Positions 8,201 to 26,100 of a stretch of 39,325 nt of DNA are shown piece after piece. Every line of letters starts with the position of its first letter. Position 1 is the stretch's first letter. Position numbers and translations under genes: made by a program. The notes beneath the pieces are model-generated. The model did not search any database and was not told the origin of the DNA. It saw only the letters and a list, made by a program, of their open reading frames with translations. This DNA comes from Hyphochytrium catenoides (taxonomy: Eukaryota; Protista; Hyphochytriomycota): positions 1 to 39,325 of the forward strand of contig FLMG01002842.1 in assembly GCA_900088475.1 (NCBI GenBank), given 5' to 3'.

Positions 8201-11060
8201 AGCTTCTTCAGGTCCTCGTTCATCGTATCATTGTTCTTATCGTTCCAGCCAGTAACGTCGTAGTAGACTTCACCTGCGCCCAGAGATTCGTTAATACAGC
8301 GCCTGCAATAGATACTTCACACTCTGCCACATGATTGTGTCTCTCTCTCTCCCTTTACAATGCTAGGCGCACAACTCTCTGTCTATCGTCCTTCCTCTTT
8401 CCTTTTAGGTTCCGTCCTAAGCTGGACTGTCCTTAATGACACGTCTTGCCCATTATAAACGTCTACCCCTCCCCTGCTTCACTCTGATCCTTGGCTTATC
8501 ATCATGTTCCCGGCCCCACCTGCATAATGAACGATGCCAAACTCCCTATCGCCACGTATTTTGGGTTGCCTATAATACGAATGCTTCATGGTTCTGCCAT
8601 CCGCTCCGAAGGACGAGTTCAGCTGCGACAACAGCTTTTTGTTGGCCTCCTCTCCACTGAGTCTCCAGATATCGTCTAGTGCCATGAGAATGCCTGGAAC
8701 ATTATTTGGCTTCCCTTCAATGAGCTCTACACAGTCTGCATTGTCTTGGAAGGAAATAAAGGTCCAGTCGATGCCCTCACGCTTGTACTCATCTTGCTCC
8801 ACCTAATAGACAAAAAATGAAAGGTAAGAGGGAAGCTTGACCCTGAAGTAGTGGTAACATGCAAGATAACAGAGTGACAGCAGACTGCATGTGGAGGGCT
8901 TGAAGAAAAATGCTCTGAGCAAGAAGAGGCCACGAAAGAGCGAGCTAGACGTGTTCTGCACCTCAAAGATATGCCTATTGAAGTGCCTCTGGAGCTTCTC
9001 GTTCGCATAATTTATGCAGAGCTGCTCGAAAGTGTTCCACTCAAACTTCTCAAAGCCATAGATATCCAGCACACCGATAAACGGAGTAGAGGAAGAGGCT
9101 TTTCTCCTCCCAGTTTTGCAGTATATGCTTATTGTGGAGTTCAACTCAGAGACTAACCATTGGAAGAGCGAAGAATATAAAGCCTTGGCTGCAAAAGAGC
9201 GAGAGTTGTTGGGAGCGCAATAAGGTAAGTACATCGCTGAGAAGCCAAAGAATGCTACATTCTCCTGTCTTTGCTCTGGAGACAATGTCGGAACAGAACA
9301 TGGACATTTTTCAAGAGATTCCAAAATTTGTACTGCCTCACCAAGAGCATCACGCTTGTCTAAGGCTTGGTCTATCCTCTGCTCTTGAATGATCACTTTT
9401 CCTCCCACGAGCAGCTGTCTTTTGCACAATGCCGTCGTTAGATCAGACAGCTGAACGCCTAACAAATTAGCCACGAGCGAGAGTGAAGAGAGAGACTCTT
9501 CGTTTTCCGGAACACACTCGTCACGATCCAGAGTAAACTTGACGTCTCCCAAATGGAGAATTGCAGCCTATAGATAGCGGATGCGAGGAGACAAGGGCGA
9601 GAAAGCGTATTGAGGACTAGAGTGATAATATTATAAAGATAGTAGGACTTGCGCCAAACAGATCGGGCAATGACCGACAAGAGGTTATTGGAGGGCTCAC
9701 CAAGGTCCGAAACAGCTCTCTCCTACTCTCTCCAGAGATGCCAATCCTTCTCATGCACTCCTCCGTCGTTGCCAGTTCTTCCTTGTCATTCCTAAGATGT
9801 TTATAGGGCTTGAGTCGGGATAGCAGCAAGAAAGTTTGGCAAGAAAGGCCAGAATTGCAGGGAGGAAAGACAGAGCTGTGAAGAAATAGAAGAGGTGACA
9901 GCAACCCCGCCATTATGTTGCTGTGAAAGAAGCAACCTTGCGCACGCACCTTCCTTCCAGCGTATAACATTCGCTTTGGTTCAAATAGAAAAACTCATGG
10001 GGTGGCTTAAGGTGTAGCTCTGATCTTAGAGTCTGATCCTCTGTCGAGAGCAGCTACACGGAATGTTAAGAACCTTAGACTCCCTTACTATCCTTTAGAG
10101 CACCACAGGAGAGCACAAAAGAGCAAAAATGGCAATATACATCTTCCGAATGCAATAGTGACCCAAGAGAGCCAAAGACAAGCTCACCACGGCTTGCCAA
10201 GCCCAAGAGGAATAGTAAGGCTGCTGGGTCGCTCACCTGGTAGAATATATGAAAGTTTCTCTCGTCTGTTGTGGGCGCGACAATTCTCGTCTTCTCCAGC
10301 AGAAAGTTCGATATCTCTGCGCCGATAATCCTGCCGACATTGTCAAACTGAATCTCTATAAACTTTCCAAAGCGCGAAGAGTTATCATTGCGTAGAGTCT
10401 TCGCATTGCCGAAGGACTCTAGAAGAGGGTTTGCGTCAAGGACTTTCTGCTCCAGAGTGCTTAGTGTGTCGAAGAAATCCTGCATGTTGTTGCCCTTAAA
10501 AATTCCTCTCTGAGACCCTGGACTGCCTAAGCCCATGCCATGCTTGGGGATAGCAGAATGCGTTATCCTCGCCAGATATTGCATGATGATCTTCGTTGCC
10601 TCCGTCTTCCCTGCCCCACTTTCTCCACTGATAATGATTGTCTGGCTTGACGGGCCATCAGACGAAGCTTCCACCAGATCAGTGTAGGCCTTGTCAGCGA
10701 CAATGAAAAGATGTGGAGGCATTGCGCCTTGAGCTTTGCCTTGATACTGCAGCATCTTCGACTGTGAAGGTAATGGACAGGCAGCAAATATGAGCAAGGA
10801 GGAGAGTGAGCCACGCTTCATCTCACCAGTAGTATGGCAGCACTTACCTCTGTGTACAGTTCAGATATGGGAGCCGTCGTCTTATACGGGTTGATGGAGA
10901 TGAGAATCGGGCCAACAAACGTGTAAACGTCATCCCTGCTGTAGCGCGCTGATAGCGTGTTCAGGATGGCACCCTCAGAGAGATCATCTAGCTGCAAAAC
11001 ATTAGGGACGCCGGACTGCAGCTGCTGCTTCTTCTTTCGCTTGCGCCTGTCTTCCACCAT
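1..11060 (-). CDS. Myo29: Myosin heavy chain with CBS-domain tail (class XXIX/Myo29-like); multi-exon, 3' end outside the window, ATG at 11060 tentative
   Basis: Motor motifs in successive exons: [15 protein letters not shown]-loop GESGAGKTE, switch-1 [10 protein letters not shown], switch-2 [42 protein letters not shown]. One long exon (6911-982) carries IQ motifs, coiled-coil repeats and CBS modules. Further exons near 760-635 ([18 protein letters not shown]), 498-262 and 62-1 ([20 protein letters not shown]) splice in frame. Motor+IQ+many CBS is, from recalled literature, the stramenopile class-XXIX architecture. Confidence 0.92.
3850..3895. other. Assembly gap (46 N) inside the second CBS module
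   Basis: Run of Ns. Alignment to the sister modules implies about 28 codons (~84 nt) are missing, so the frame change across the gap is an artefact. Confidence 0.95.
5810..6545 (-). repeat. Five UvrB/C (UVR)-like helical-hairpin repeats in the myosin tail
   Basis: [26 protein letters not shown]; [26 protein letters not shown]; [26 protein letters not shown]; [26 protein letters not shown]; [26 protein letters not shown]. These resemble the UVR pattern LxxAxxxxxF/YExAxxLrDxIxxL. Confidence 0.65.
6600..6850 (-). other. IQ (light-chain binding) motifs of the myosin neck, about 3 copies
   Basis: [26 protein letters not shown] and [13 protein letters not shown] match IQxxxRGxxxR and follow the converter directly. 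Confidence 0.8.
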
Positions 11061-12257
11061 TTTACCCTTCTGCTCACAGAGGCTGACGCCACGTGCGGTC
11101 CTTGAAGCAGCCCCCTCTCACAGGCTTGAAGCTCGTTAGCCCTCCAACGAAAGCATAGGGTAGCGGACGTTGCTGAGCATCAGAATGCCCATAAGAACCA
11201 CACACGCACACGTTAGACTCAGCTTCTCTGTCACTCAATCCCGAGCGCGGACTCGGCCTAATATTGTCTCCAGACTGCTCCAGAGACGTCAATGCAGATC
11301 CCCAAGAGTCTGCAGATCTCTACTTTTCAGCAAAAGGGGTTAATAAGGCCGAGAGGCCCGCTGGTTTGCTAGGCAGCAGACCGGTCACGGAGCGGCAAAA
11401 AGTATTGACAGGAAAGGCGAGGACCGGGATCTGGCTCGAAGGATGATGGGAGGGAAGGTAATGGAGGGTGTTCAGAGCTACCCCTGTAGTAGGCAGGACA
11501 ATGAAAAGATTCATACGCCCAAAACTTCTTGGCAGGTTGGATCAAGCTGTCTACCGTCGGAAATAGCTTTGTGAAAGATACAGAGATCCCAGACGAAGCT
11601 TTCTTGGTTGAAACATTAGGCGTTTGGTTCTTATTGAAGCTTTGGGAGCTGCAGGATCTGGCGCTGTCGGGCAGAGAAAGGACACATGACCTGGCGTTAT
11701 TAATCTTGGCGCGGAGACCGCGAAGCTTGCTGGAGCAGAAGGAGATGCGTGGACCGGTGGCCGGGGATGGGCTGAGGGAGCTGCTGAGGGGATATAGATT
11801 GATTGGAATGCATCCGTAGATCACGAGCGGCGCGCGGGGCCACGAAGGTGCCGATAACGCCGCAGTTCTATGGAAGGAGCTCTCTCTAAATAACAGGGTC
11901 AAAGGCAGGTTGACCTGGCTTCCAGCTGACAGTACAGTGCGCTATGAACGCACGTGGTCCAGTAGCTTGTAGTCTCTATGTCACAGCATCGTGCCCTGTA
12001 CTGGGGCTAAGGTTCGTGAGTACATCTGGGTGGGCCGATCTCAATCTGACGTAGAGTTTAGGCTGAAGATAATGGGAAACGTATCCCGTGGACTTCTTTA
12101 TTAGATACCTAACATGGGCTGCTTTGGGAGCTCCGTAGCTTAAGTCTGATAAAATGGGTATTTGAGGCTTCCCTGGCAGCTATCAAAGTTCTATTCAGTG
12201 TTGAGAGGACTGCACGAATGTCCAAGAGAAGGAGGGTTCATATTACGTTAGGAAGAA

Positions 12258-12308: not shown

Positions 12309-12476
12309 TGAAGGACTTCGTTAAAAATGGGCTTCGGGAGACAGAACGGTGTAAGGAGCTTCATATCGTGATGCTCCCCTTGCTGTTCCTCCTCGCGAAC
12401 GCATGGCTCTGCTTACGATTCGTCTCTATGGATCATCTTTCACCTCTCTCGTACACGCAACTAGCATCAAAGGCGA

Positions 12477-15400
12477 CTAGGTTGCTAACACTTCAGCTTC
12501 TTCAGGTCTTGTTACTGAAGCCAATTCCTTGCCCAGGTAGCCTTCAGCCATGGCCTCCATCTGGTTATCGTCAAGCTGGGCTCTACCTGTCTTGCCTTCA
12601 TGCTCTGCCGGCCCCTCCTTCTCTGGCCCTGGAACTGCCCTTATTGTGAGCTTGTCATTCTCTATTTCTCTCTCTTCCGGACCTTCCAGAATGCTTCTTC
12701 GAATGAGATTGAGTGACAGGGAAGAACCTTGCGTCATGGACGACCGGGAAGAACTCTTTCGTCGGCCAGCGTTGGCGGAATAGAGAGAGGAGAACGAGAG
12801 AGCTCTGCTTTTGGTCTCTCCCAAGCTCAGGAAAGGAGAGGATGAAGAGATTGAAGACCGCGAAGAAGAGGGACAAGCCTCTTCTTCTTGCGCTTGCTGT
12901 TGGACATAATCCATAAGGCTCTGGAAGGAGGAAGAGAACCCAACACCCTCGGCAAAGTGGAAGAGCTGGGAGCGGCTCAAGGTGTAAAGCTTTCCGGCAT
13001 CTAACTTAGGGTTGGAGAGGATGATTGGCACGAGCTTCTTGCCCTTATCCTCTGCAAAAGCGAGTTGGTCGTTGACTAGGACAGTGCGGGATGATTCTCT
13101 TGAGAGGATGACGATGAACAGTGTGCAGCTGAGGATATTGTCCTAAACAGGATCAGAACGAGAAAGAGAGAACCAGACATTAGGGCCAACCCTCCAATCG
13201 TATTAGGTAGCATGAGGTCATTGGCTAGGTACGGGCGGCTCGGACGAGGAGACATGTAAGGGATGAAAGTAAGTGTTGAGGAGAGATCATTGTAGTCAAT
13301 GGAAGAACGAGAGAGAGAATAAGACACAGACGTCGCTAGGTGGGAAAGAGTGTGCGAACCTTAGCAGCAACGATCCTCTCTTTCATGTCCGCTGTGGCGC
13401 TTCCCGAGTCAATGGTGCACAAGCAACCCTGCCGTCTGAACTCTTTCTGGAGCTGTCGAGCGAACTCTGGATGACAGTCTCCATGAGAGATGAAGATTGA
13501 AAGAGAACTGGGGACCGGAGACCCTGGACAGAAGACAGAGGATAGAATGAGAGTTGAGCTGGCAATGATTGAACTCTAACACTCCTCATTCTTAAAGCGC
13601 GTCTTCACGCTCTTCTCTGTCCCACTTCAGTGCTCTCATCCCTCCCTTGTCCTGTTCCCTTGCCCTCCCTTTCCTTCCTTGCTCACCTCCAGAAAGTAAC
13701 GTCATGTCCCCAGTGCCACAGGAAGAGATGCTACTTCGTCGTCGTACTCGGGGTTCTTCTATCTCGGATGATGCGTCGTCCTCCCAAAACTCCAGCCTGT
13801 GCTTCTCTATCTCATCTCTGAGACCATCCAGAAGAAGACAGAGACGATGGGCATACTCTTCCTCATCAATTGCCATTGCGCTGACTTTGTCCCCTCCTTC
13901 TTTCTCTCGATCTTTTGATGGAGGAGGAGATAAGAAGCAGGAGTCAAAGTGCACGATCTGTCGAGTGTAAAGATAGACTTGCAGCTCGTCATCTATGGTC
14001 ATCTTCTCTATAAGAGATGCAACGACCGGGACCCCTTCCTGTTTAGCGAAGGCCAGTTCTTTCATGCACCACTCGCTCTTTGCGTAGTCCTTACTGAGGA
14101 TACAGAGGACCACGGACGCGTTCTGGATGCCCCTGGCAATCTCCTCTCTCCAAACAGCTCCAGCTCCTGCGAGATAATGGAGATGAAGTACCCGGAAGTT
14201 AGACGTGAGGGACGGAAGGCCTCCCATCTGTGTGTTTCTGTCTGTCTGTCTGTCTGTCTCTCTTTCTGAATAAGCCAACCTTCTCAACCGTCTGGCTTAG
14301 TATCTCTCACCTATGCCAGAAGGGTCCATACTATCCATCCAGGTTGTTATGTTGTTATCTTCTAGGCTCTTGCGAACCTAGCACAGCTCCGTTAGCAATA
14401 TACCCAGATAGATAATGGCAGAATAAGCTTTTCCTTTGCCCTAAAAGCTGAGCGGGCCTTGCTACTCATGAGAGCAGCGAAAAGAAGACGATCTGCAGAC
14501 ACGGAAAGCTGTATACCAGCAACCACGGAATGCAAGAGATGGAGAGAGGAAGCAAAAAGATAGCGTCGTACCTTTAACGCAAACTCTCTTTGTGAATGAG
14601 CGTAGCTAATCATAACGTCCCTCGCTCCTGCCTCCTTCTTCACGGCGAACTGGAGCTCAGTGCTCGTCGTGCAGTCGATGGGGCGCTTGCCTTCTTTGTT
14701 TGTTCGCATCAGATCTCCGCCTGCGAGAGGAGAGCAGGATATGACAACCGGAAGAAAGCCATTGAGGGGCCAGGACGACAGCCCCAAAGAGAAAGTTCAC
14801 AGTCATATATGGGCATGGCCCATAACAAAGCCGAAAAGCTTAAGGAAGAAACAAGGAGAAAGGTTGAGACCGAGGAAGGGATATGTACTAGCAGAACACT
14901 GAGCCGCTACGAGGAATGACGTGAAGTACCAACTTGGCAAGCTCTTCCTCTTGTCAAGAAAGAGACAGCGCAATGCTATTCCTACCATATTTGATGAACG
15001 AGAGAGCGGTGGATCTGTTCTCCAATTTGAGTGCGATGTGCAACGCTGTATCTCCACTCTCCTCTATTGTGGCGTGAATGTCAGCCCCGCTTGCCAGCAA
15101 CTGAGACACAACGGCCGGAAAGATGTCATCAACCTGCAGAGAGAGCCCGAAAACGCAAAAGCACAACAATGGGAAAGGGAAGAATATTAACAAATTAGCC
15201 GGGAACAGAGACGGAGGAGAGAGAGAGCGGAAAGAGAGAGAGAAAGGGCGACAGAAGACGGGGAGAAAACAGAGAACGAGAAAGAGAGGAGAAGGGTGTG
15301 ATGAGGAACCTCAAAAGGGCTTGAGATAGAGAGAGAAGATGATGGAGACAGACAATGGGGGAGGGGAGGAAGACTAACTGCTAGACAGAGAGAGAGGACG

Positions 15401-18400
15401 GACCTCTGCGGCAAGAAGAAGAGGTGTGCGGCCTTGATTGTCTCTGATGTTGGGATTGGCGCCAGCACTGAGGAGAAGATCCATAGCTGAGGCGTGACTA
15501 TGACGGGATGCCCTGTAGACGAAGCGAGACCGACAAGCAAGCAAGCGAGAGAGAGAGTTGGAGGCATAGAGAAAAAAGAGGGAAAAGCGAATGAGTGAGT
15601 GAGAGGGCTGTTTAAGAAGTATAAGAATCTATGAAAGAAAAAGCAGAAAGCAGAGACCCCGACAGAGAGAGATGCTAGAAAACTAAGGAGATCCGAAGAG
15701 CAACGCGGGACATCTAGAGAGGCACACATAGAGAGTAAGAGAAACACAAGGAAGATAGCCAGCACTCAAGAACGTAGGCAGACATGGACATGTGTAGGCA
15801 GTGCATGTCTACCAGTGAAGTGGTGTCTTTCCAAAGACATCCCTCGCGTTGACATCCGCCCCTGCTTTGATAAGAGTCTCTATAGCATCCAGAGCACCCA
15901 CTATGGCAGCCCAATGAAGAGGAGTACGAAGAGAAGCAGCAGGGAACTGGTCTCCCAGAGTGTCGGGGGAGAGACCGAAAGAGAGAATTCTCTCTATTCT
16001 TTTCTTATCATTCTCTGCTGCAGCTGTGTGCAAGGGTGAGAGAGCTACATCTCCTCCCCACTCTTCCAGCATGCGGTAGAGGGCCTTCTGCTCTCGAAGA
16101 TATGCTCTCTGGAGCACTGTGAGGCGCATGTACGAGCCAGCGCGAGGGATGTAAAGAAGGTTCGCACCGTGACACAGGAGGACCTATAGAAGAGCCAGAG
16201 AAGCAGAGATATTTGAGCCGAGTAGAGAAAAAGGAGGAGAGGCCAGGAGGTGCAAACAAGACGAAATTCAGCAGAGAGAGAGGGAGAAGCAAAGGAGAGG
16301 ACCGTAAGAATGAGTTTATCTCCGCCTCCATCATGACGAGTCAGCAGACTAAGAAGTAGCTGAAATGGGGATGGAAAGGAGTAGAGAAGGAAGAAACACT
16401 GAAGAAAGAGCGAAAAGTAGTCTCTAACTCTGTTGAAGGGGAGAGATGGACAGTCTTGGACAAGCAAACGCTGTTGGGAGGGAGAAAGGCAGAGTGGCTC
16501 TTACCTTGAGGACCTGTACGTTGTCTACCCAGTAGAGGGGAGGGACACAGCTCTCAGCTGTTATTCCCTTGGAGAGAATGTTAACATCTGCCTGGTGGTC
16601 GATTAGCCACTTTACGGCAGCGACTTGACCGTTGGCCGCCGCTACATGCAAAGCGCTGAGGTAGAGCAGAGAAAGTGAGCACAACCACTCGCTAATGGAC
16701 CAAGAGAGAGAAAGAGGACCATGAGCGTTGAAGAACTTTTAAGGCAATAGGACGGGGCCATGGAACGAGAGACCAAGATATCATTATCTCTGTTCTTAGG
16801 ATTTACCTTGCCAGGACATCGCTCTGACAGATTTCTGCTGATCCATGGTATCTGATGGCTTTGGAGCGAGTCCAGCCAAAGAAGAAGAGATAATGGATGC
16901 ACCAGATATAGAAGTTCCGCAGACTTAAGCCGCTGGCAATAGAGGGAGCGAGCGAGATAGGAAGAAACGGGGAACAGAAGGTGAGAAGGGTGAGGAAGAG
17001 AGAAAGCTTAGCACGCAATGCCGTCATACTGTCATTCTGCTGTGCTTCTCTATCTGATCTTACCTTCCCACGACCTCCTTGACGCTTTCTTTGTAATCAC
17101 CTCTCTCTCTCTCCCTCTGTTTCGCTCTTCCCACCTCTGCTCTCCCTTACTCCCTCCTTTTTTCTTCTCTTTTTCAAGCTTTGGGGTTCTTGTCTTCTTC
17201 TTCCTGGCCCCATCTTCTCATTGAACCATTGTTATCAACCGTCAAGCAAGATCCTCTCCTCTCCCCTCACCTGTGCTCCGCCCTGTCTAGCATGTTGACC
17301 TCAAAACCATGCTGCAGAAGGGTCGCCATCACCTCCACGTGTCCATAGGCCGCGGCAGCGTGCAGAGGGTTCAAGTTACTGATCCCAAGGTAACCCCAAA
17401 GAGAAGGAGGAGAGCGGTACATCCGTACAATAAAGTCTGCTCCAAACTCCTTTCTACATAGTTTGAAAGAGACGGAGAAGTCAGAGAGTAAGAGAGGCAA
17501 AAAAGCCCAAAGGGAGAGAGGAAGAGAGGAAAGAGACAGAGGGCAGAAGGGAAGGCGAGCAAAGTTTTAAGGAGACAGAGAGACGGAAGTGTCTGCACAA
17601 GAGAGGGGCCAGGTGTAAACGTTGGGAACGCGAGACATATAGCAGATGAAAGGAAACTGACTGATAATCCAGGATCACTGCCAGCAACAGGCGCGAGTGA
17701 GAGTAGTGAGAGAGAATGAACCCGGAGGAGCAGAATGAGAGAGATTGAAACAAGGAGAAACGAGAGGGAGCTAGAGAAGAGAGGGTGACACAAGGGATAG
17801 GGAGAAATGGAGGAGAAAAGCCCGAGGTTGAGAAAGGCAAAGAGAAAGGGCAAAGAGAAAGGGAGAGAGAGGGAGGGAAAGAGAAAAACGAGAATTGCTG
17901 AGTACGACCTTCCGCGTTCTACCAGCTTTGTAACCTCCTCTCCCTGCCCCAAGCTGGCAGCATCCACCAATTTTCTCCTAAACTCTTTCTTAGCCTGATA
18001 GCGCTGTAAAAAGCAGCTCCAGCGAGAAAGACAGACTGGAAACTTGGAGCTGAGCAAATAAAATTAAGAAAAGAGAAGGAAAGAGATGGACATTAGAGAA
18101 GGCTTCCTAGTCATCGTGAAGAGAGAGAGAGACAAGTGAGAAAGACAGAAAAGACAATAGCAAAGGGGAAGGGGCCATGAAGGCATCCCACACCGTTAAC
18201 ACTCAGTTCTAGGAAGTAGAAGAGAAGGAGGCGCAGACTCGTATCGCCAGAGAGTTGGAAGGGGATCTCGCCACGGTGGAAGAGAAGTCAACAGTCTAAG
18301 AAACACTACACTCGGCAGAGAAGGAAGTGAGAAGCTAGATTAGAGTTCTTTTATTCTCTCTGGCTCACCGGACGCCACTCTCGGCGACTTTGAAGCCAAA

Positions 18401-20403
18401 CGTGCAATAGTGAAGCTCCAGATGGTGTCTATAAAGGTTGAAGAGGTTGATCTGCTTCCATGCCAAGCAATAGATTATAACGTTGATGAGCTGCACGCTG
18501 AGCTCCAGGTAGGCGCCAGTGTTGAAGCAAGTTGCAAGGCCATAGTTCATAAACGGCCCAGCCACGGCAGTGACCGTCCAGAAGACGATGAAGATGATCT
18601 CTCCAATGACAAATATCTCGCAGGTCTACAAGGAGCGAAAGGGGAAACATCAGTTGAGGCGACACAGATGCCAAGGCAGCGAGAGACAAAGTGGACTATC
18701 AGAGAGACTTTGTAGAAAGAGTCAAAGAAGAGGATGTGAAAGGATGAGCAAAGAATAACGAAAAGAGTAGAACGCAGAGAGAAGAAAAATAAATAAGACG
18801 AGAAAGAGACACAAGGCAAGAGGAAGGAGGATTTGCCGTTTATCAACCACATGGCGTACTGGAGTTTTCAACGAAGTGAGAGGGAGGAGGTGGCAAGAAG
18901 AGAGAGCATTAGGATAGAGATTGAAGTGCCAAACGGGTGAGAATCCCGGGTCCAGTGCTCTCTCTCTCTCTCTCTCTCTCTGTGTATGTCTCTCTCTCTC
19001 TCTCTGTGTGTATGTCTCTCTCTCTCTTTCTCTTTTTCTCTCTCTAATTCACTCTCTCACCTCCAAGAATGTCGTCCGAATCAACCTCCTGGAGGTCCAA
19101 TCAACAGAGAATAGGCCAAAGATAGGCGGTCCAATGGCCGCTAAGCCCAGCACTATATTGGGTGCCAAGAAATAGTTGAAGAGGAGCCACAGGTTGATGG
19201 TCGCGGCACATCCTGTGTCTAGAAGCTTCGCTCTGTATTGAGAGGACTGCTGCTGGATGAGAGAGACAGCTAGCAGGTTAAGAGAGGAGAGAAACGCGGT
19301 TGAGAGGAGCAGACGCTTGGCGAAGAAAGAGTTGCCAATTCCCTTCCTCAAACCCCTGAAAGGAAACGAGAGAGGAAGAGAGGACGCCCTTGTGTCTCCA
19401 TGTCTCGTGTCTCCCTCCTGTGCTGCAGCTTGGCTGCGAGGCTCCTCTGCAGGTGCAAGACCGCATTCTGGATCCACTTCCTCACAGGCAGGTAGGGTTC
19501 CTATTGTTCCTGACCTAGTAAACCAATAACAGGACAGAAAGGAAGGAGAGAACAACAGCAAGAGATAGGAAGAATGAAGGAAGTTAGGGCAATAGATAAG
19601 CTTCGGATGAGAGAGAGAGAGAGAAGGAGGACTTGACCAAGGAGAAGGAAAGACAGAGAGAGTGTGAGAGGATTATTAACGACAGAGGAGAAGATGGAAA
19701 GAGGAAAGTAAGAAAGCAACAGAGAGGGAGCGCGGACCTGGTATCTGCGGTTGGCTGTTGGCCTCTCCTTAGAAGGAAGCTTTCTCCAAAGAAACTTTGC
19801 TTCTGCCTCCATCCTTTCTTTCTCTCTTTGACGGAAGGAAGAGGAGATAGAGGACCAGCTTCTCGATGTCTAGGGGATGTTAAGGAGGGAAGAACGGCCC
19901 GCTTTTCTTTCTCTCGCCCTGAACTAATCTTTCCTGCAGCCTAGCGGTCCAGACAGAAGGAAGAGAGTCCATGTCGTCAGAGAGGGTTAGGGTATATAAA
20001 GGTCTCAGATAAGAGAGAGAGAGAGAGACAGATGCACACAGAAAGAGCGAGAGAGTCTGTTCGAGTGGAACGGTTAACAAGGAACAAGAGAAGAACACCA
20101 GGCACGCCTTTTCTCCTACGTACCTCCGTGTAGCATTTAGCAGTGAGCTTTGCCCTTGCAGCGGTCTCAGTAGAGAGAGAAACACGAGGCGGGGTGGGAC
20201 GAGGGAGGGGTGGATGCCTTTCTTCTCTTCCTCCGATAGGACCTCCAGATTGTGACTTTGGACTTAGCTGAGATCGCAGTCTTTCCAGCAGAGGGTCAGG
20301 GAGAGGTAAGCTGTCCGTCTTCGCGCTGCTCTTTGTCCTAGAAAAGGATATAAGACCAGACGAACAAAGAGCAGAGAGAGAAAGAGAGTGAGTGAGTGAT
20401 TGA

Positions 20404-20457
<54 letters not shown>

Positions 20458-21751
20458 AGAATGTAGACAGAAAGAAATGAGAATGGCGGCCCGGAGGGCA
20501 CATTCTGCTATTTGTCAAGATTCAGTTGGGATTTATTGGGGACATTAGAAGGTACTGAGAGAGAGAGAGAGAGTGCTTGAAGAGTGAGGTCATAGAGATT
20601 GAGAAGAGACGATGAAAAAGGCATTCAGAACCAGATTTTGTTTAAACGGAGAGAGAGAGAGAGGGAGAGAATAAGAAGAATGCGAAGTTTAAGGAGACAA
20701 GAAAATAAAGGACTTAGAAAGGCATTTTGTCTTATAGTCTTTGGTAGACAAAGGCTGAGAAGATGGAGTGAGGAGATGGAAACGGCGAAGAGAGAAACAG
20801 AAAGGCATCTAGCCATAGAAACTGCTATAGGCAGAGAGAGAGAACAGATGGAATGAGGACAAGAGCGGCAAATGAATTTAATTATAGAGAAATGGACAGA
20901 AAGTGAGATAGAGATCAACATAGAGGGACAGACAGAGAGGACAAAATGCTGTTGAGAGAGAAGAGACACCATGGGCAAGGAGAAGGAAAAAGCAGGCCGA
21001 CAGAGAATTGGCGCCATCAGGAGCGTGCGATAGAAGTGAAGCTTGAACGGTCTTACCCTGGGCCAGCAGTAATGGAAGGCGCAGCGTTCACCCGCTTACT
21101 CTCGTGCTCTTCCTGCTTACTTCTTTCTTCAGCCCGTGTTCCCCGCCCATTCTCCTCTTTGACTCTCAGTTTAATGGGGATCAGCTGCGGTACTGTGGGG
21201 CTAAGAGGAGGCTCAGAAGAAGCGATGGGAGAGAGAACAGAAGAGGAAGAGAGATGAGACGGAGAAACTACTGAATGAGGAGGAGGAAGCCCCCAGATAG
21301 TTGAAAGTGCAGAGGGAGGAGAAGAGAGAGAGAGGGGAGAAACATGAGGCCTAGCCTCATTCCTCTGGTTATCTTCGAGCGTCCTCTCCGCAGGGCTGAG
21401 AGGGCTCAGATTGAGAAAGGGAGACAGAGGTGAGGACACAACCGCCCCTTGCTCATCCTGTCTCTCACTCTGCCTGGCCATAGCACCTTCCCGGTCCTCT
21501 ACTCCTAAAGGGAAGGAGAACGGATTCGCAGAGAGAGAGGCAGCGGACTCACTCCATCTGCGGTAAGAAGTAGCATTGACTTCCTCCTCTCCTTCTCCTT
21601 CTCTCTGATGCCTTCTCTCTCGCTTTCTCCCTTCTCTCTCCTCTTCATCATGCAGCAGTCGATGACAGAAGGCGCCTGTCCGCGCTCTATCTCCGCTACT
21701 TCGAGGATGGGGTGCGCTCTTTATCAGTTGAGAGCGTATCTTCTTCGTCAT
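12477..21751 (-). CDS. Transmembrane ankyrin-repeat protein with two C-terminal TIR domains (about 4TM-ANK-TIR-TIR), about 17 exons
   Basis: Manual GT-AG splicing gives one continuous frame. Exons include 21751-21057, 20337-20124, 19940-19738, 19514-19061 and 18625-18369 (the last two hold the hydrophobic helices), 18049-17909, 17453-17271 ([14 protein letters not shown]), ANK exons at ~16930-14985 ([59 protein letters not shown]), TIR1 exons at ~14720-13687, TIR2 exons 13523-13360 and 13142-12477 (TAG stop). The 5' exons are the least certain. Confidence 0.85.
12900..13500 (-). other. TIR domain 2, degenerate (Gln at the catalytic Glu position)
   Basis: [88 protein letters not shown]. Most of it is read in a frame missing from the ORF track. 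The Gln codon is at 13065-13067. Confidence 0.8.
13940..14620 (-). other. TIR domain 1 (TIR_2-like), catalytic Glu present
   Basis: [79 protein letters not shown]; the Glu codon is at 14057-14059. Confidence 0.9.
18958..19045. repeat. Compound (CT)n microsatellite at the 5' end of an intron of the ANK-TIR gene
   Basis: Seen directly; it reads (GA)n on the sense strand just after the donor at 19060. Confidence 0.9.
20404..20456. repeat. (GT)n(GA)n compound microsatellite
   Basis: Seen directly in the sequence. Confidence 0.95.

Positions 21752-22441: not shown

Positions 22442-22483
<42 letters not shown>
22144..22483. repeat. (CT)n tract at 22144-22222 and (GA)n tract at 22446-22483 (complementary pair)
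   Basis: Seen directly; followed by a 2-nt N gap. Confidence 0.9.
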
Positions 22484-23123
22484 NNAGTGATGTAATGCTT
22501 CCACCTTCTTGCCTTTTTATGTCCTTAGACAATGTAACGGACCGTGAAACCTTCATTCTTGTAAAGAAACAACGTTAATTTCAATTTCTATAGATCGTAA
22601 GTAAGGAGAGCTTTCATAGTTTCAGAAAGAGGGAAGCTTTCGTTTGCTACCTTGTGCCTCTCTGGTCTGTGAGCCATCCTGCAGCTCCAGGGCTGCGCTC
22701 TGTCTGTCTCTCCCCCTCTCTTTTCTCTCTCTCTCCCTCTTGTTGTTCCTTCCTCCATCGCTGGTCCAGCCTTTCGCTCTTTCCTTACCAACGATGGCTC
22801 CAATCGTTCCCACTCTGATGTACTTTCCTCAGATTTCTGACTATAACGCTCCTCCTCTGCTGCTGCTGCAGCCTGTGCACTTACAGCAGATGGATGATCG
22901 CTGGGTGGTTGAGTTAAGAAGACGGAGGGATGACGAGTACGGCAGACGAGCCATAGAGGATGACCAGAGCCCAAGATTTGGCAATTTGAGAAGAGGGCGC
23001 AAGGAAGATGGCGGTAAATGAAGAGGACAGGACCATCAGAGAAGAGAACAGGACAACCCTATCTATGGTTGAGGGTGGAACAAAGTCATTGATTAGTTGT
23101 TCTTATTTCTGGCTATCGCGCTC

Positions 23124-26100
23124 TCACATAACCTCATAGGCCGGTCCTCCCCCTCCCTCTGGCACTGTCCAGTTGATATACTCCTTGGGCATTTTGATCG
23201 AGCAGCATTTGCAGTGGACGCAGTTCTGAGCATTGATGACAAGCTGAGGCTGGCTCCCATCCTCCGGTGATGTGTACTCATAAACCCTAAGAGAATTGTT
23301 AGATTAGAGAAGAGGACGGCTCTGTGAGCGACATCGATAGGGAGGGAAAGTGGATCAAAAGCAAGGAAGACGGAAAAGGGTTGACTGAGTATGAGCACTA
23401 ATAAGCAGAGAGGAAAGGCAAAACAAGATCTCTTTCGTCCTCCCCACTCCTCTTTCTCTCGTGTGGCTTACTTTGCTGGACAGAATCTTTGCTCCGGACC
23501 GGCATAGACAGGGAAAGACTCATTCGAAGGCACCTCCTCCAGCCCTTGCTTCAGGCGGAGATGGGCAGGTTGGTCGTGGTTGTGATTGGTGCCGCTGCGG
23601 CCAAGATTGGTCAGCAAGTCGAAGGTGACCTTTCCGTCGGGCTTTGGATAGTCGATGGGCTTGAAATCCGAAGCTTTGCCTGTCTTCTCACTGTCTGTCT
23701 TGGTGTTCGCAATCGTCCATGGTTCCTAAGGGAGTCAAAGGAGACAGGCGGAGGTAGATCAATAAAGGGACGCTGTGGCGGTCAATGAGACAGATATCAG
23801 TTCTGATAATGCGAGACGTCTTAGAGAAAAAGTGAGGTCGTTAACGGGGCAACAAGGATACTAGGGCAACGAAAACAGAGAGAAATCGCTCAATATTCGT
23901 TTGCCTCTTTTCTCTTACCTTGCCCCTGAGGATGAAAGACTCAAGAGCCGCATATGCGAGGCCCGGAACTAGACCCCAGTGGAACGCGGCATGCGTGTTC
24001 CGGACCCGCTTTAACTCATCAAAGACCCACGACTTTTTCAAGTCGTGCTCGTACCTTCAAACAAGGGAAAGTGAGTGCACCCAGGACACAGGGAGACGGC
24101 GACAGGAGCAGTTGGAAAAGCGCAAAATTGGGTTGCCAGTAGACGAGGAGTATGTGCAGCCGGGAAACCGGATGAGGTTTCAAGAAAGTTAACTCTGCCT
24201 TGCAGTTAGAAAGAAAGAGGAAGACCTACTGCTCTACTTCCACCGCATTCTCCGAGAGATCTAGCTCTCCAGTGCTGGCCACAGGTTCCTTCCCTGACCC
24301 CTGAAGGGCAGCGAAAACAGCTTCTGCGGCGACCATCCCCGACTTCATAGCCGTGTGGCTTCCCTAGTTTGGCAAGACACAGGAGTAAAGGTTAGCGACA
24401 GAGTTATCGAGTCCTGGAAAACATTTCAAAAGCGGTCTTATGAAGAAACATCTTTGTTCCTATACTGCCCATGAGCCCAGCCGATGGGAATAGTATGAGA
24501 GTCATAGCAATTTGGTGCGAGACACAGAGCGAGAGCAAGGTACGGGGAGGGAGATAGCGAAAAGTTGAAAGTAAGGGTGGTCTTCCCACCTTGATCTTTA
24601 CTGAGTTCAAAAAGCCAGCGGAGCACCCGATGAGGGCTCCACCGGGGAAGGTTAGCTTAGGGATCGCATGGTATCCGCCTTCGTTGAGCACTCGAGCGCC
24701 ATAAGAAATGCAGTTGCCCCCTAGAAGACGAAATGACCACGAATGGCACAGATGAGTGAACATTGACTCGTCAGGGGCTAACACTTAGAAGTCTATGGCC
24801 AGGAGTAATTTGCCGGATGTCCCATTGCGTGCAATGAGAGAGAGAGACAGCTAGACTCTCCGATGGGCACTCACCTTCCAGATGCTTTTTGATATCTGGA
24901 TGCGTCTTCCACCTCTGGAACTCTTCATAAGGAGAGAGATAAGGGTTCTCATAGTCCAGCCCCACGACATAGCCGATCAGCACTAGATTGGGCTTCATAT
25001 GGTAGAGGAAAGAGCCTCCAAAGTTCTTGTCAAAGAGAGAGTTCTGCAGTGGCCAGCCCAAACTATGCTGAACAAAGCCTATTATGGATTAGGAAACAAG
25101 ATGAGTAGAATAGAATCAGACCCAGAGCAGAATGGGAGTGAGGTGATCTGATGCTCGGTCAATTGCACTTGTTACCTGGCTTGATTTTATCCTCTGGAAC
25201 CTCCCAAACCTGCCACCGAGCACAGTTGAGAGGACGAATGGGTAAGAGGCAGGCCGAAAGTCTTAGGGGTCGGGCAGAGCGGAGAAGGAATGCGTTTGGT
25301 GTGTAAGGTCGTAGTGCTAAGCCCAGGTTGGAGCACTTAAGAGGAAGATACTTAGGGTGGTGAAAGGGTTTGAATGGAATGGCTTGCTTTCATCCTGCTG
25401 TTCTCTTACCTCCTTGACACCTAGTCCGTACGTCTGAGGCTGGCGACCTTCTCTAAGGTTGAATTTTCGCATCAGTTCCTCGCTGCAAGAACCTCTGGCA
25501 CCCTCTCCAAACAAAGTTTGTCTTGCGCGAAGCTCCATTCCCCGCGCGAATGTCGACTTAGGCTTTCCATCCTTGCCTACACCTACATCTCTTGTGGCGA
25601 TGCCGAGCACACTTCCATCCTCTCTGTATAATACCTGGCAGAAAAGTCAAACGCTCCTTAGAACCTCCCTCGCAGTTATTCTGCCACGTTGGACCCCCCT
25701 TTCGCCCTCCCTCCCGGCTTTCTCAATTCTCGTTACCTCTTCGCTCTTCTCCTCTATCCAGCCCAAACCATTAGTAAAAGCGCTTGCGCGTCACTATCTG
25801 TAACTGGCTTCGAATGTACGCTTCACTCTTTTCTTGTCATCGTTTCGTCGCTGATCATAACCCGATACTCGATCTTCTCGCCGAACGCTTACAGAGCAAG
25901 CCAAGCTCACCTCAGATGCTGAAAAGCCTGGATAGATCTCCACACCAAGCTCTTCCGCCTGTTCTCCCAACCACCGGACGAGTTTGCCAAGACTGATAAC
26001 ATAATTGCCTTGATTGTGCTGAAGAAGTAGCGACGAAGGAATAACAAGTAGATGGTTAATCTTCCCACCATAAAGAGTAAACGTTGTCCGACAGGACAGA

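What the first reader, a model, noticed from the sequence alone, without database searches (positions are those of the whole stretch)
12900..14620. Catalytic / pseudo-catalytic TIR tandem (Glu versus Gln)
Seen: TIR1 has [21 protein letters not shown] with the WCxxE motif intact. TIR2 has [21 protein letters not shown], which keeps the flanking LAFA but has lost WC and carries Gln at the Glu position. The two are joined by an acidic, then Ser/Arg-rich linker (RRRSSISS). Established: that Glu is required for TIR NADase activity, E-to-Q/A substitutions inactivate it, and active sites form at TIR-TIR interfaces. Inference: TIR2 is a built-in allosteric partner (activator or autoinhibitor) of TIR1, analogous to a kinase/pseudokinase pair, and may be regulated by linker phosphorylation.
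Basis: partly seen in the sequence, partly recalled or inferred. Interest (0 to 1): 0.72.

Follow-up and report, generated by a model that had tools for sequence, protein, structure and literature searches.

The report
Enzyme-type TIR plus conserved dead TIR
This is the tail of a real, intron-split protist gene for a membrane-anchored ankyrin protein that ends in one enzyme-type TIR domain and a second TIR whose catalytic glutamate is a glutamine; the same pairing is conserved across water moulds and is already on record, but what the second domain does is untested.

Summary
On the minus strand, five GT-AG exons (14720-12477) encode TIR1 with [15 protein letters not shown] (Glu codon 14057-14059). 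A linker follows that holds RRRSSISS, then TIR2 with [12 protein letters not shown] (Gln codon 13065-13067). The Glu and the Gln align by BLASTP and by profile-profile comparison.

TIR2 is a true TIR. Its counterpart in a homologue passes Pfam's threshold on its own and folds confidently into a TIR.

The asymmetry marks a whole family. In 90 TIR2-type domains, 83 have Gln, and all 48 upstream TIR1 domains have Glu. Named members are all oomycete 4TM-ankyrin-TIR-TIR proteins.

The family is already on record. Lapin et al. 2022 note uncharacterised oomycete ankyrin-TIR proteins. A 2026 preprint lists Gln for these second TIRs and shows that one Phytophthora TIR1-type domain makes cADPR in E. coli. 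Four others, including the closest relative of this TIR1, gave no listed product.

The proposed role of TIR2 as a partner of TIR1 stays an inference, with precedents in RRS1/RPS4 and ThsB1/ThsB2. AlphaFold2 gave no confident TIR1-TIR2 packing. The linker is variable, so regulation by phosphorylation is unsupported.

This scan has already noted the same design on at least four other pieces of this genome. It is a new member of a known kind.

The parts
14572..14720 (-). Exon carrying the end of the ankyrin region and the start of TIR1 (strand A and helix A: [16 protein letters not shown]; TIR1 begins at 14619).
   Evidence: Translation and splice sites. Pfam TIR_2 profile positions 1-27. Aligns to family TIR1. 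tblastn to L002, 75% identity, E = 8e-17.
14311..14377 (-). Small TIR1 exon ([22 protein letters not shown]): end of helix A, strand B and the start of the BB loop.
   Evidence: AG/GT boundaries and phase. Collinear with uninterrupted homologue sequence.
13796..14166 (-). TIR1 core: rest of the BB loop ([14 protein letters not shown]), [35 protein letters not shown], an insertion predicted as a beta-hairpin in the homologue model, and the long last helix ([14 protein letters not shown]).
   Evidence: Pfam TIR_2 5.9e-11, 43.3 bits, cut-off 28. PDB sequence hits to plant TIRs aligned over the WCxxEL motif. Family alignment. Secondary structure of the homologue model.
14057..14059 (-). GAA codon of the TIR1 glutamate at the catalytic position (WCMK-E-L).
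   Evidence: Sequence. Glu in 48 of 48 family TIR1 domains that lie upstream of a TIR2.
13687..13795 (-). First part of the inter-TIR linker: acidic stretch ([13 protein letters not shown]), then [11 protein letters not shown] (RRRSSISS at 13721-13744), then GDMTLLSG.
   Evidence: Sequence. Homologous linkers are variable and predicted disordered (pLDDT under 50; comparison).
13360..13523 (-). First TIR2 exon: end of the linker, strand A (SIFIS), SHGDCH loop, helix A, strand B, a short variable BB loop and the start of helix B (KERIVAAK). TIR2 begins near 13500.
   Evidence: Pfam TIR_2 profile 1-44, weak on its own. Aligns to family TIR2. tblastn to L002 E = 1.4e-6.
12895..13142 (-). Second half of TIR2: [80 protein letters not shown].
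   Evidence: Pfam TIR_2 profile 48-107, weak on its own. E = 2e-15 to P0001. tblastn to L002 E = 2e-24. Family alignment.
13065..13067 (-). CAA codon of the TIR2 glutamine at the position of the catalytic glutamate ([12 protein letters not shown]).
   Evidence: Gln in 83 of 90 family TIR2 domains.
12477..12894 (-). Ser-rich, low-complexity C-terminal tail and the TAG stop (12477-12479).
   Evidence: Translation. Homologues have variable tails.
14957..18063 (-). Upstream exons of the same gene encoding ankyrin repeats. Context only; exon boundaries were not refined here.
   Evidence: Pfam Ank hits on five pieces. tblastn to the L002 ankyrin ORFs.
18461..19312 (-). Upstream exons with four hydrophobic, transmembrane-like segments. 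Context only.
   Evidence: Kyte-Doolittle peaks at 19256-19312, about 19103-19198, 18560-18616 and 18461-18517. Weak tblastn match to the equivalent L002 region. No Pfam family.

Best explanation
The region encodes the C-terminal signalling end of one multi-exon gene for a four-pass membrane protein with an ankyrin array and two TIR domains. The gene is a divergent member (about 40-55% identity in the TIRs) of a family otherwise named only from oomycetes.

TIR1 is an enzyme-type TIR. It has the Glu, the Trp four residues before it, and a long, near-invariant BB loop. It most likely converts NAD+ to cADPR when TIR1 domains are brought together.

TIR2 is a genuine TIR fold that has lost the Glu (now Gln), the Trp (now Leu) and five residues of the BB loop, and its BB loop is variable. 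It still keeps near-invariant motifs: SHGDxH after strand [11 protein letters not shown] in helix C, and YxLSR..HF in helix D and strand E.

The most likely reading is that TIR2 does not cleave NAD+. It probably works through TIR-TIR contacts, as a built-in non-catalytic partner that controls or templates the assembly on which TIR1 activity depends.

Shown here: the gene structure, the two domains, the Glu/Gln asymmetry and its conservation.

Shown by others for a paralogue only: cADPR synthesis by a TIR1-type domain.

Inferred: that TIR2 is inactive, that it partners TIR1, and whether it activates or inhibits.
For: - **Gene model and motifs:**
- **Domain identity:** TIR1 passes Pfam. TIR2 of homologue P0001, scanned alone, scores TIR_2 1.7e-12, 48.4 bits. 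The AlphaFold2 model of TIR2 has pLDDT 85.9 and pTM 0.79, and its top 50 Foldseek PDB matches are nearly all TIR structures such as SARM1, AbTir, MyD88, SPARTA and RRS1.
- **Glu aligns with Gln:**
- **Conservation:** 27 of 27 first-round homologues have Gln. After a profile search of 1.84 billion representatives, 83 of 90 TIR2-type domains have Gln, 86 of 90 have Asp just before it, and 48 of 48 upstream TIR1 domains have Glu.
- **Conservation maps:** the TIR1 BB loop is near-invariant and the TIR2 BB loop is variable.
- **Architecture:** the same layout is found in L002 and in full-length Pythium, Thraustotheca and Albugo proteins.
- **Activity:** a paralogous TIR1-type domain (1179-aa Phytophthora protein, TIR 816-972, Glu 892) makes cADPR in E. 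coli. The text states that a point mutation of the glutamate abolished production in all active TIRs (bioRxiv 10.64898/2026.04.20.719644).
- **Precedents for a non-catalytic TIR controlling a catalytic one:** RRS1/RPS4 (PMC13732033) and ThsB1/ThsB2 (PMC12578639).
Against: - There is no direct evidence of a TIR1-TIR2 contact. The AlphaFold2 tandem model has a disordered linker and pTM 0.47; it used only 23 aligned sequences, so this is weak evidence.
- Four of five family TIR1-type constructs tested in the preprint have no activity listed. One of these is no. 126, which shares the [10 protein letters not shown] subfamily motif with this TIR1. So the activity of this TIR1 is not established. These constructs were isolated domains, and some were truncated.
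- A few family members carry Thr, Leu, Arg or Glu instead of Gln. The Gln itself may therefore matter less than the neighbouring Asp.
- No transcript evidence exists for this gene.
- The spliced protein of this window was not itself searched or folded.
Confidence: 0.5

Rival explanations
1. TIR2 is an independent adaptor or scaffold TIR. It recruits other TIR proteins or downstream factors, in the way TLR/MAL/MyD88 assemble cooperatively, and it does not regulate TIR1 catalysis.
For: TIR2 keeps conserved surface-type motifs in helix C, helix D and strand E. Its Foldseek matches include the scaffold TIRs MyD88, MAL and TLRs at scores similar to the enzymes. AlphaFold2 shows the two TIRs as independent beads on a flexible linker. 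By earlier notes of this scan, this genome encodes many other TIR proteins that could be partners.
Against: TIR2-type domains are almost always found directly after a TIR1: in 51 of the 59 cases where there is room upstream. That argues for a joint function. No partner is known.
Confidence: 0.2
2. TIR2 is a ligand-sensing pseudo-enzyme. Its remodelled pocket binds NAD+, cADPR or a related nucleotide without cleaving it, and so gives substrate or product feedback to the protein.
For: The best-conserved TIR2 residues lie where enzyme TIRs build the NAD+ pocket: SHGDxH in the loop after strand A, the Ser ending strand C, and Asp-Gln at the start of helix C. The Glu-to-Gln change is the mutant used in the preprint to abolish catalysis.
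Against: The Trp four residues before the catalytic position is replaced by Leu, and the BB loop is short and variable, so the canonical NAD+ site is incomplete. No binding data exist and no coordinates were available to inspect the pocket.
Confidence: 0.12
3. TIR2 is still an enzyme with non-canonical chemistry, for example using the near-invariant Asp before the Gln or the His residues of SHGDxH, or acting on another substrate.
For: The Asp before the Gln is more invariant (86 of 90) than the Gln itself, and it is retained where Gln is replaced by Thr, Leu, Arg or Glu. The His-Gly-Asp-x-His motif is near-invariant.
Against: Every active TIR in the 2026 survey depended on the glutamate. [quoted passage not shown] An Asp one residue earlier is also seen in the plant TIR motif WCLDEL, where Glu is still the conserved residue at the catalytic position.
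Confidence: 0.08
4. The TIR2 exons are not part of the mature mRNA, or the gene is a pseudogene, so the tandem is an artefact of reading the genomic DNA.
For: No RNA run was listed for this stretch. The gene model is inferred only from sequence and homology.
Against: The reading frame is open across five exons with canonical GT-AG sites and matching phases. Exon junctions match continuous homologue sequence. TIR2 residues follow the family's conservation pattern. By earlier notes, paralogues with the same design exist in the same genome.
Confidence: 0.04

Closest known systems
Oomycete 4TM-ankyrin-TIR-TIR proteins (often auto-annotated 'TRP-CC family protein'; for example Pythium insidiosum GLE04463.1, Thraustotheca clavata OQS04396.1, Albugo candida CCI44432.1). 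Noted as 'uncharacterized ankyrin repeat-TIR proteins' by Lapin et al. 2022 (PMC9153377).
   Same: Same order of parts: hydrophobic N-terminal region, ankyrin array, TIR1 with S.WC.KEL, a variable linker, and TIR2 with SHGDxH and [10 protein letters not shown].
   Different: The window gene is intron-rich (five exons for the TIR part alone), whereas the oomycete-type locus examined (L002) encodes the TIR-TIR region in a single open reading frame. It shares only about 40-55% identity in the TIRs, and no database representative is closer. The organism was not identified here; earlier notes of this scan call it a soil protist.
The cADPR-producing TIR domain of a 1179-aa Phytophthora protein (D0N4Z2_1, Table S4 no. 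122 of bioRxiv 10.64898/2026.04.20.719644).
   Same: It is a TIR1-type domain of the same superfamily. By eye, MISY.H, TxWMD.[20 protein letters not shown] and SEWC.KELA.AK are shared.
   Different: It is a different subfamily after helix C, lacking [10 protein letters not shown]. In that subfamily's representative the second TIR carries Ile, not Gln. The subfamily closest to the window (no. 126) has no activity listed.
Arabidopsis paired TIR-NLRs RRS1 (sensor) and RPS4 (executor).
   Same: One TIR has the catalytic Glu and BB-loop Asp, and the partner TIR lacks them. The dead TIR holds the active one in a pre-formed hetero-complex (PMC13732033).
   Different: The two TIRs are on two polypeptides with NB-ARC-LRR bodies, not in one chain behind ankyrin repeats and a membrane anchor. 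There is no specific sequence kinship beyond the TIR fold.
Staphylococcal Thoeris ThsB1/ThsB2.
   Same: There are two TIR proteins, and only one of them needs its catalytic Glu. The other binds the trigger, then recruits and stimulates the cyclase (PMC12578639).
   Different: It is bacterial, acts in trans, and the complex is induced by phage capsid protein. ThsB1 still has a Glu, which is merely dispensable.
Dictyostelium TirE (two diverged tandem TIRs) and the triple-TIR protist family noted earlier in this scan.
   Same: Several TIRs sit in one chain in a unicellular eukaryote. In the triple-TIR family only one keeps the Glu (note s1-345834).
   Different: The partner domains differ (RCC1 repeats; a beta-barrel). 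No homology to this family was tested here.

Membership tests
TIR domain (Pfam PF13676 TIR_2 / PF01582 TIR) | Significant profile match for TIR1. | tested here: met
   The exon piece 13595-14296 scores TIR_2 5.9e-11 (43.3 bits, cut-off 28) and TIR 1.2e-6.
TIR domain (Pfam PF13676 TIR_2 / PF01582 TIR) | Significant profile match and TIR fold for TIR2. | tested here: met
   The two window exons each score only 13.8 bits, but they hit collinear parts of the profile (1-44 and 48-107). The joined sequence was not scanned. The homologous TIR2 (P0001:160-300) scores 48.4 bits, 1.7e-12. hhalign of the TIR1 and TIR2 profiles gives 97.4% probability. The AlphaFold2 model has pLDDT 85.9 and its top 50 Foldseek matches are nearly all TIR structures. 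The window exons align without trouble to that family.
Enzyme-type (NAD+-cleaving or cyclising) TIR | Glutamate at the start of helix C (SARM1 E642 position). | tested here: met
   This row is for TIR1. WCMK-E-L, codon 14057-14059. Glu in 48 of 48 family TIR1 domains.
Enzyme-type (NAD+-cleaving or cyclising) TIR | The same glutamate in TIR2. | tested here: not met
   Gln, codon 13065-13067. Gln in 83 of 90 family TIR2 domains. The Trp four residues earlier is also replaced by Leu.
Enzyme-type (NAD+-cleaving or cyclising) TIR | BB loop with conserved Asp and Gly. | tested here: inconclusive
   The TIR1 BB loop ([16 protein letters not shown]) holds Asp and Gly residues and is near-invariant in the family. 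The TIR2 BB loop is five residues shorter and variable. Structural equivalence of individual residues was not checked because no coordinates are returned.
Enzyme-type (NAD+-cleaving or cyclising) TIR | Measured NAD+ turnover or cADPR-isomer production. | not testable with these tools
   Only literature on relatives is available. One paralogous TIR1-type domain is active, and four others, including the closest, have no activity listed.
Oomycete-type 4TM-ankyrin-TIR-TIR family | N-terminal hydrophobic segments, then an ankyrin array, then TIR1, then TIR2, in one gene. | tested here: met
   Four Kyte-Doolittle peaks. Ank hits. Collinear tblastn to the ORFs of L002. Upstream exon boundaries were not refined here.
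Oomycete-type 4TM-ankyrin-TIR-TIR family | Family motifs [20 protein letters not shown] and S.WC.KEL in TIR1; SHGDxH and [10 protein letters not shown] in TIR2. | tested here: met
   All are present in the window.
TRP-type cation channel (the name some databases give to homologues) | Six-helix ion-transport domain with a pore loop. | tested here: not met
   Three full-length homologues and the window's hydrophobic exons match no Pfam family other than Ank and TIR families, so no ion-channel family. Only four hydrophobic segments were found. The name most likely comes from the ankyrin repeats.

The most novel reading that the evidence does not exclude
TIR2 is an obligate pseudo-enzyme partner acting in the same chain. 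Its conserved helix D / strand E surface docks on the invariant BB loop of a TIR1, in the same chain or a neighbouring one, to open the active site. The protein would then carry a ready-made asymmetric TIR dimer, and would be a self-contained, membrane-anchored cADPR synthase switched by its ankyrin and membrane parts. This would be the first catalytic/pseudo-catalytic TIR pair in one polypeptide with a defined mechanism.
Probability: 0.25. Interest if true: 0.65.

Novelty: new member of a known kind. Interest (0 to 1): 0.38.

Why it matters
TIR enzymes act only when TIR domains assemble, and how assembly is controlled outside plants, animals and bacteria is largely unknown. This family fixes an enzyme-type TIR next to a Gln-type TIR behind a membrane anchor, and it keeps that pairing across oomycetes and at least one more distant protist. 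That makes it a convenient natural system for asking what a dead TIR does for a live one. It could also explain why most isolated TIR1-type domains of the family gave no product in the published survey.

For this particular window the gain is modest. It adds a divergent, intron-rich member and a clearer picture of which residues of TIR2 are constrained.

Tried and rejected
- **RNA evidence:** no run was listed for 12400-14800.
- **PDB sequence search with the last exon:** no hit even at E = 10.
- **Word-based protein searches:** these were limited by the length window. The last exon found one protein. The TIR2 region of P0013 found only three. This is why the profile search of all representatives was run.
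- **ESM Atlas features for TIR2:** only generic TIR clusters came back.
- **Recent tandem duplication:** rejected. The two TIRs share about 23-25% identity, have different intron positions, and differ by a BB-loop deletion and a hairpin insertion.
- **TRP-channel reading:** rejected.
- **Conserved phospho-site in the linker:** rejected as a family feature, because RRRSSISS has no fixed counterpart.
- **Fixed intramolecular packing:** not supported by AlphaFold2.
- the joined, spliced protein of this window was not built, searched or folded. Exons were used one by one by reference, and the stored homologues P0001 and P0009 stood in for the tandem.
- **Not done:** the organism was not identified.
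Full report
**What is there**

The window is eukaryotic DNA with short GT-AG introns. On the minus strand, five exons cover the finding:

| Exon | Coordinates | Content |
|---|---|---|
| 1 | 14720-14572 | ...[19 protein letters not shown] |
| 2 | 14377-14311 | [22 protein letters not shown] |
| 3 | 14166-13687 | [44 protein letters not shown] ... [50 protein letters not shown] |
| 4 | 13523-13360 | [54 protein letters not shown] |
| 5 | 13142-12477 | [63 protein letters not shown]..., a Ser-rich tail, and TAG |

The phases fit.

Upstream on the same strand lie ankyrin exons (Pfam) and four hydrophobic segments.

**Are both parts TIR domains, and do Glu and Gln correspond?**

TIR1 passes Pfam's threshold (TIR_2, 43.3 bits). 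Its WCxxEL stretch aligns to plant TIR enzymes in the PDB.

The two TIR2 exons each give only weak Pfam hits, but the hits are collinear. The two halves of the window align to each other without gaps over 61 residues, with Glu opposite Gln.

The last exon found a 350-residue metagenomic protein, P0001 (E = 2e-15). P0001 carries both TIRs without interruption, with SEWCLKELA in the first and [12 protein letters not shown] in the second. Its second TIR, scanned alone, passes Pfam (48.4 bits).

A profile of family TIR1 aligned to a profile of family TIR2 gives 97.4% probability over 127 columns. Glu falls on Gln and Trp on Leu. TIR2 has a five-residue shorter BB loop and lacks the roughly 18-residue insertion before the last helix of TIR1.

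AlphaFold2 of the family TIR2 gives pLDDT 85.9 and pTM 0.79. Its top 50 Foldseek matches are nearly all TIR structures, both enzymes and scaffolds.

Exons were used by reference, and stored homologues stood in for the tandem.

**The family**

A word search with P0001 returned 43 proteins. They come from Phytophthora, Globisporangium, Thraustotheca and Aphanomyces, plus unnamed assemblies. All 27 that reach TIR2 have Gln, and every one that covers the TIR1 motif has Glu.

A profile search of 1.84 billion cluster representatives with the TIR2 alignment gave 61 proteins at E <= 1e-30. I re-scored all fetched proteins locally with TIR1 and TIR2 profiles:

| Feature, across 90 TIR2-type domains | Count |
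|---|---|
| Gln at the catalytic position | 83 |
| Thr | 2 (Achlya and one unnamed relative) |
| Leu | 2 |
| Arg | 1 |
| Glu | 2 (P0098 from an unnamed assembly; one borderline match) |
| Asp at the preceding position | 86 |
| TIR1-type domain directly upstream, where there is room | 51 of 59 |
| Glu in those upstream TIR1 domains where the position aligned | 48 of 48 |

Named members are all oomycetes: Pythium insidiosum, Nothophytophthora, Thraustotheca, Albugo, Aphanomyces and Achlya. One is a marine transcriptome entry.

A metagenomic scaffold (L002) shows the same gene layout in a few long ORFs: four hydrophobic helices, ankyrins, then TIR-TIR. The window matches it collinearly.

Full-length homologues match only Ank and TIR families in Pfam, so no channel family. 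The database label 'TRP-CC family' is therefore not backed by a channel domain.

No representative is closer than about 40-55% to the window's TIRs. The window is thus a divergent, intron-rich member.

**What is constrained**

Across the family, the TIR1 core is more conserved than TIR2 (mean pairwise identity 0.70 against 0.49). The linker is the least conserved part.

- **TIR1:** the strand A loop, the whole BB loop and helix B ([20 protein letters not shown]), [19 protein letters not shown] and LLLDGxRDEIE are near-invariant.
- **TIR2:** conservation is concentrated in FxFxSHGDxH, the end of helix B, the strand C Ser, SE..[17 protein letters not shown], YxLSR..HF and GF..SF. Its BB loop is variable.

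So TIR2 is not decaying. It has its own constrained pocket-side and surface motifs, but it lacks three hallmarks of the catalytic site.

**What is already known**

Lapin et al. 2022 mention that some oomycetes share uncharacterised ankyrin repeat-TIR proteins (PMC9153377).

- Its Table S2 lists many oomycete second TIRs with GLN at the structurally defined catalytic position.
- Its Table S4 tests five TIR1-type domains of this superfamily in E. coli.
- One of them makes cADPR (no. 122; 1179-aa protein, TIR 816-972, Glu 892; 4 h induction).
- Nos. 123, 124, 126 and 127 have no activity listed. No. 126 shares the [10 protein letters not shown] subfamily motif with this window.
- The main text names the oomycete result in one sentence and does not discuss the tandem.

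Earlier notes of this scan describe the same design on this window (s1-341988) and on at least four other pieces of the same genome. One of those notes led me to the preprint, which I then read myself.

**Mechanism**

Established knowledge is that TIR NAD+ turnover needs the Glu and the BB loop and occurs only in assemblies. In plant resistosomes each active site belongs to an asymmetric TIR pair (summarised in PMC13732033).

Two documented systems use a TIR that does not need catalysis to control one that does:

- RRS1/RPS4, where the sensor TIR lacks the Glu and the BB-loop Asp.
- ThsB1/ThsB2, where only the ThsB2 Glu is required and ThsB1 recruits and stimulates it.

By analogy, and given the conservation pattern (invariant BB loop in TIR1, unconstrained BB loop but constrained helix C, helix D and strand E in TIR2), I rate a non-catalytic partner role for TIR2 as the most likely reading.

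This is inference. AlphaFold2 of a homologous tandem predicts two confident TIRs joined by a disordered linker, with pTM 0.47, so no confident mutual orientation. Whether TIR2 activates or inhibits cannot be told.

The linker's RRRSSISS is not conserved. Only a basic/Ser-rich character and a short [ST]-hydrophobic-hydrophobic element (GDMTLL here; GTMLHT, DSMFGS and SSFFGD elsewhere) recur. Phospho-regulation has no support beyond composition.

**Verdict**

This is a new, divergent member of a known but functionally unexplored family. Its interest lies in the family's conserved live-plus-dead TIR pairing, which is testable with simple recombinant assays, and not in this copy in particular.

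Noticed in passing
P0098 (unnamed Logan assembly, 902 aa), TIR2 at residues 777-901: This is the one clear family member whose second TIR has Glu at the catalytic position (SDELAYAEDKN). Its SHGDxH motif is changed to AHAECH. It may be a lineage that kept or regained the Glu.
   Followed up: partly
P0143 (Aphanomyces astaci RQM21065.1, 853 aa): UniRef names this protein 'NADAR domain-containing protein'. It carries a TIR2-type domain with Leu at the catalytic position, preceded only by the tail of a TIR1. This is a possible link between this TIR type and an ADP-ribose-processing domain.
   Followed up: no
P0059, P0074, P0087, P0088, P0093, P0102 and others: The weaker hits of the TIR2 profile are large proteins with five to seven TIR repeats, most of which keep the Glu. 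They are a separate multi-TIR family of unknown origin and function.
   Followed up: no
L001 and L002, beside the TIR gene: A CCDC61-domain gene lies next to the ankyrin-TIR-TIR gene, on the opposite strand, in both Thraustotheca clavata and the metagenomic scaffold. This suggests conserved local gene order in oomycetes. It is not seen next to the window's gene.
   Followed up: no
window 10078-11117 (-): Exons of a myosin motor head ([10 protein letters not shown]-loop, [10 protein letters not shown]...INPYK) lie downstream of the TIR gene on the same strand.
   Followed up: no
window about 23100-25650 (-): Exons here resemble electron-transfer flavoprotein:ubiquinone oxidoreductase (for example [16 protein letters not shown] and a C-terminal 4Fe-4S-like CVHCKCC). 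They lie upstream of the TIR gene on the same strand.
   Followed up: no
window about 22480 and 15000-21000: An N (assembly gap or ambiguous base) sits inside a CT/GA dinucleotide repeat near 22480. The introns of the TIR gene are strongly pyrimidine-rich on the coding strand, seen as high GC and AT skew on the + strand between 15 and 21 kb.
   Followed up: no
P0044 (2664 aa): This database protein contains two complete TIR1-TIR2 units. It is most likely two neighbouring family genes fused by a gene caller, which would mean tandem gene copies in that genome.
   Followed up: no
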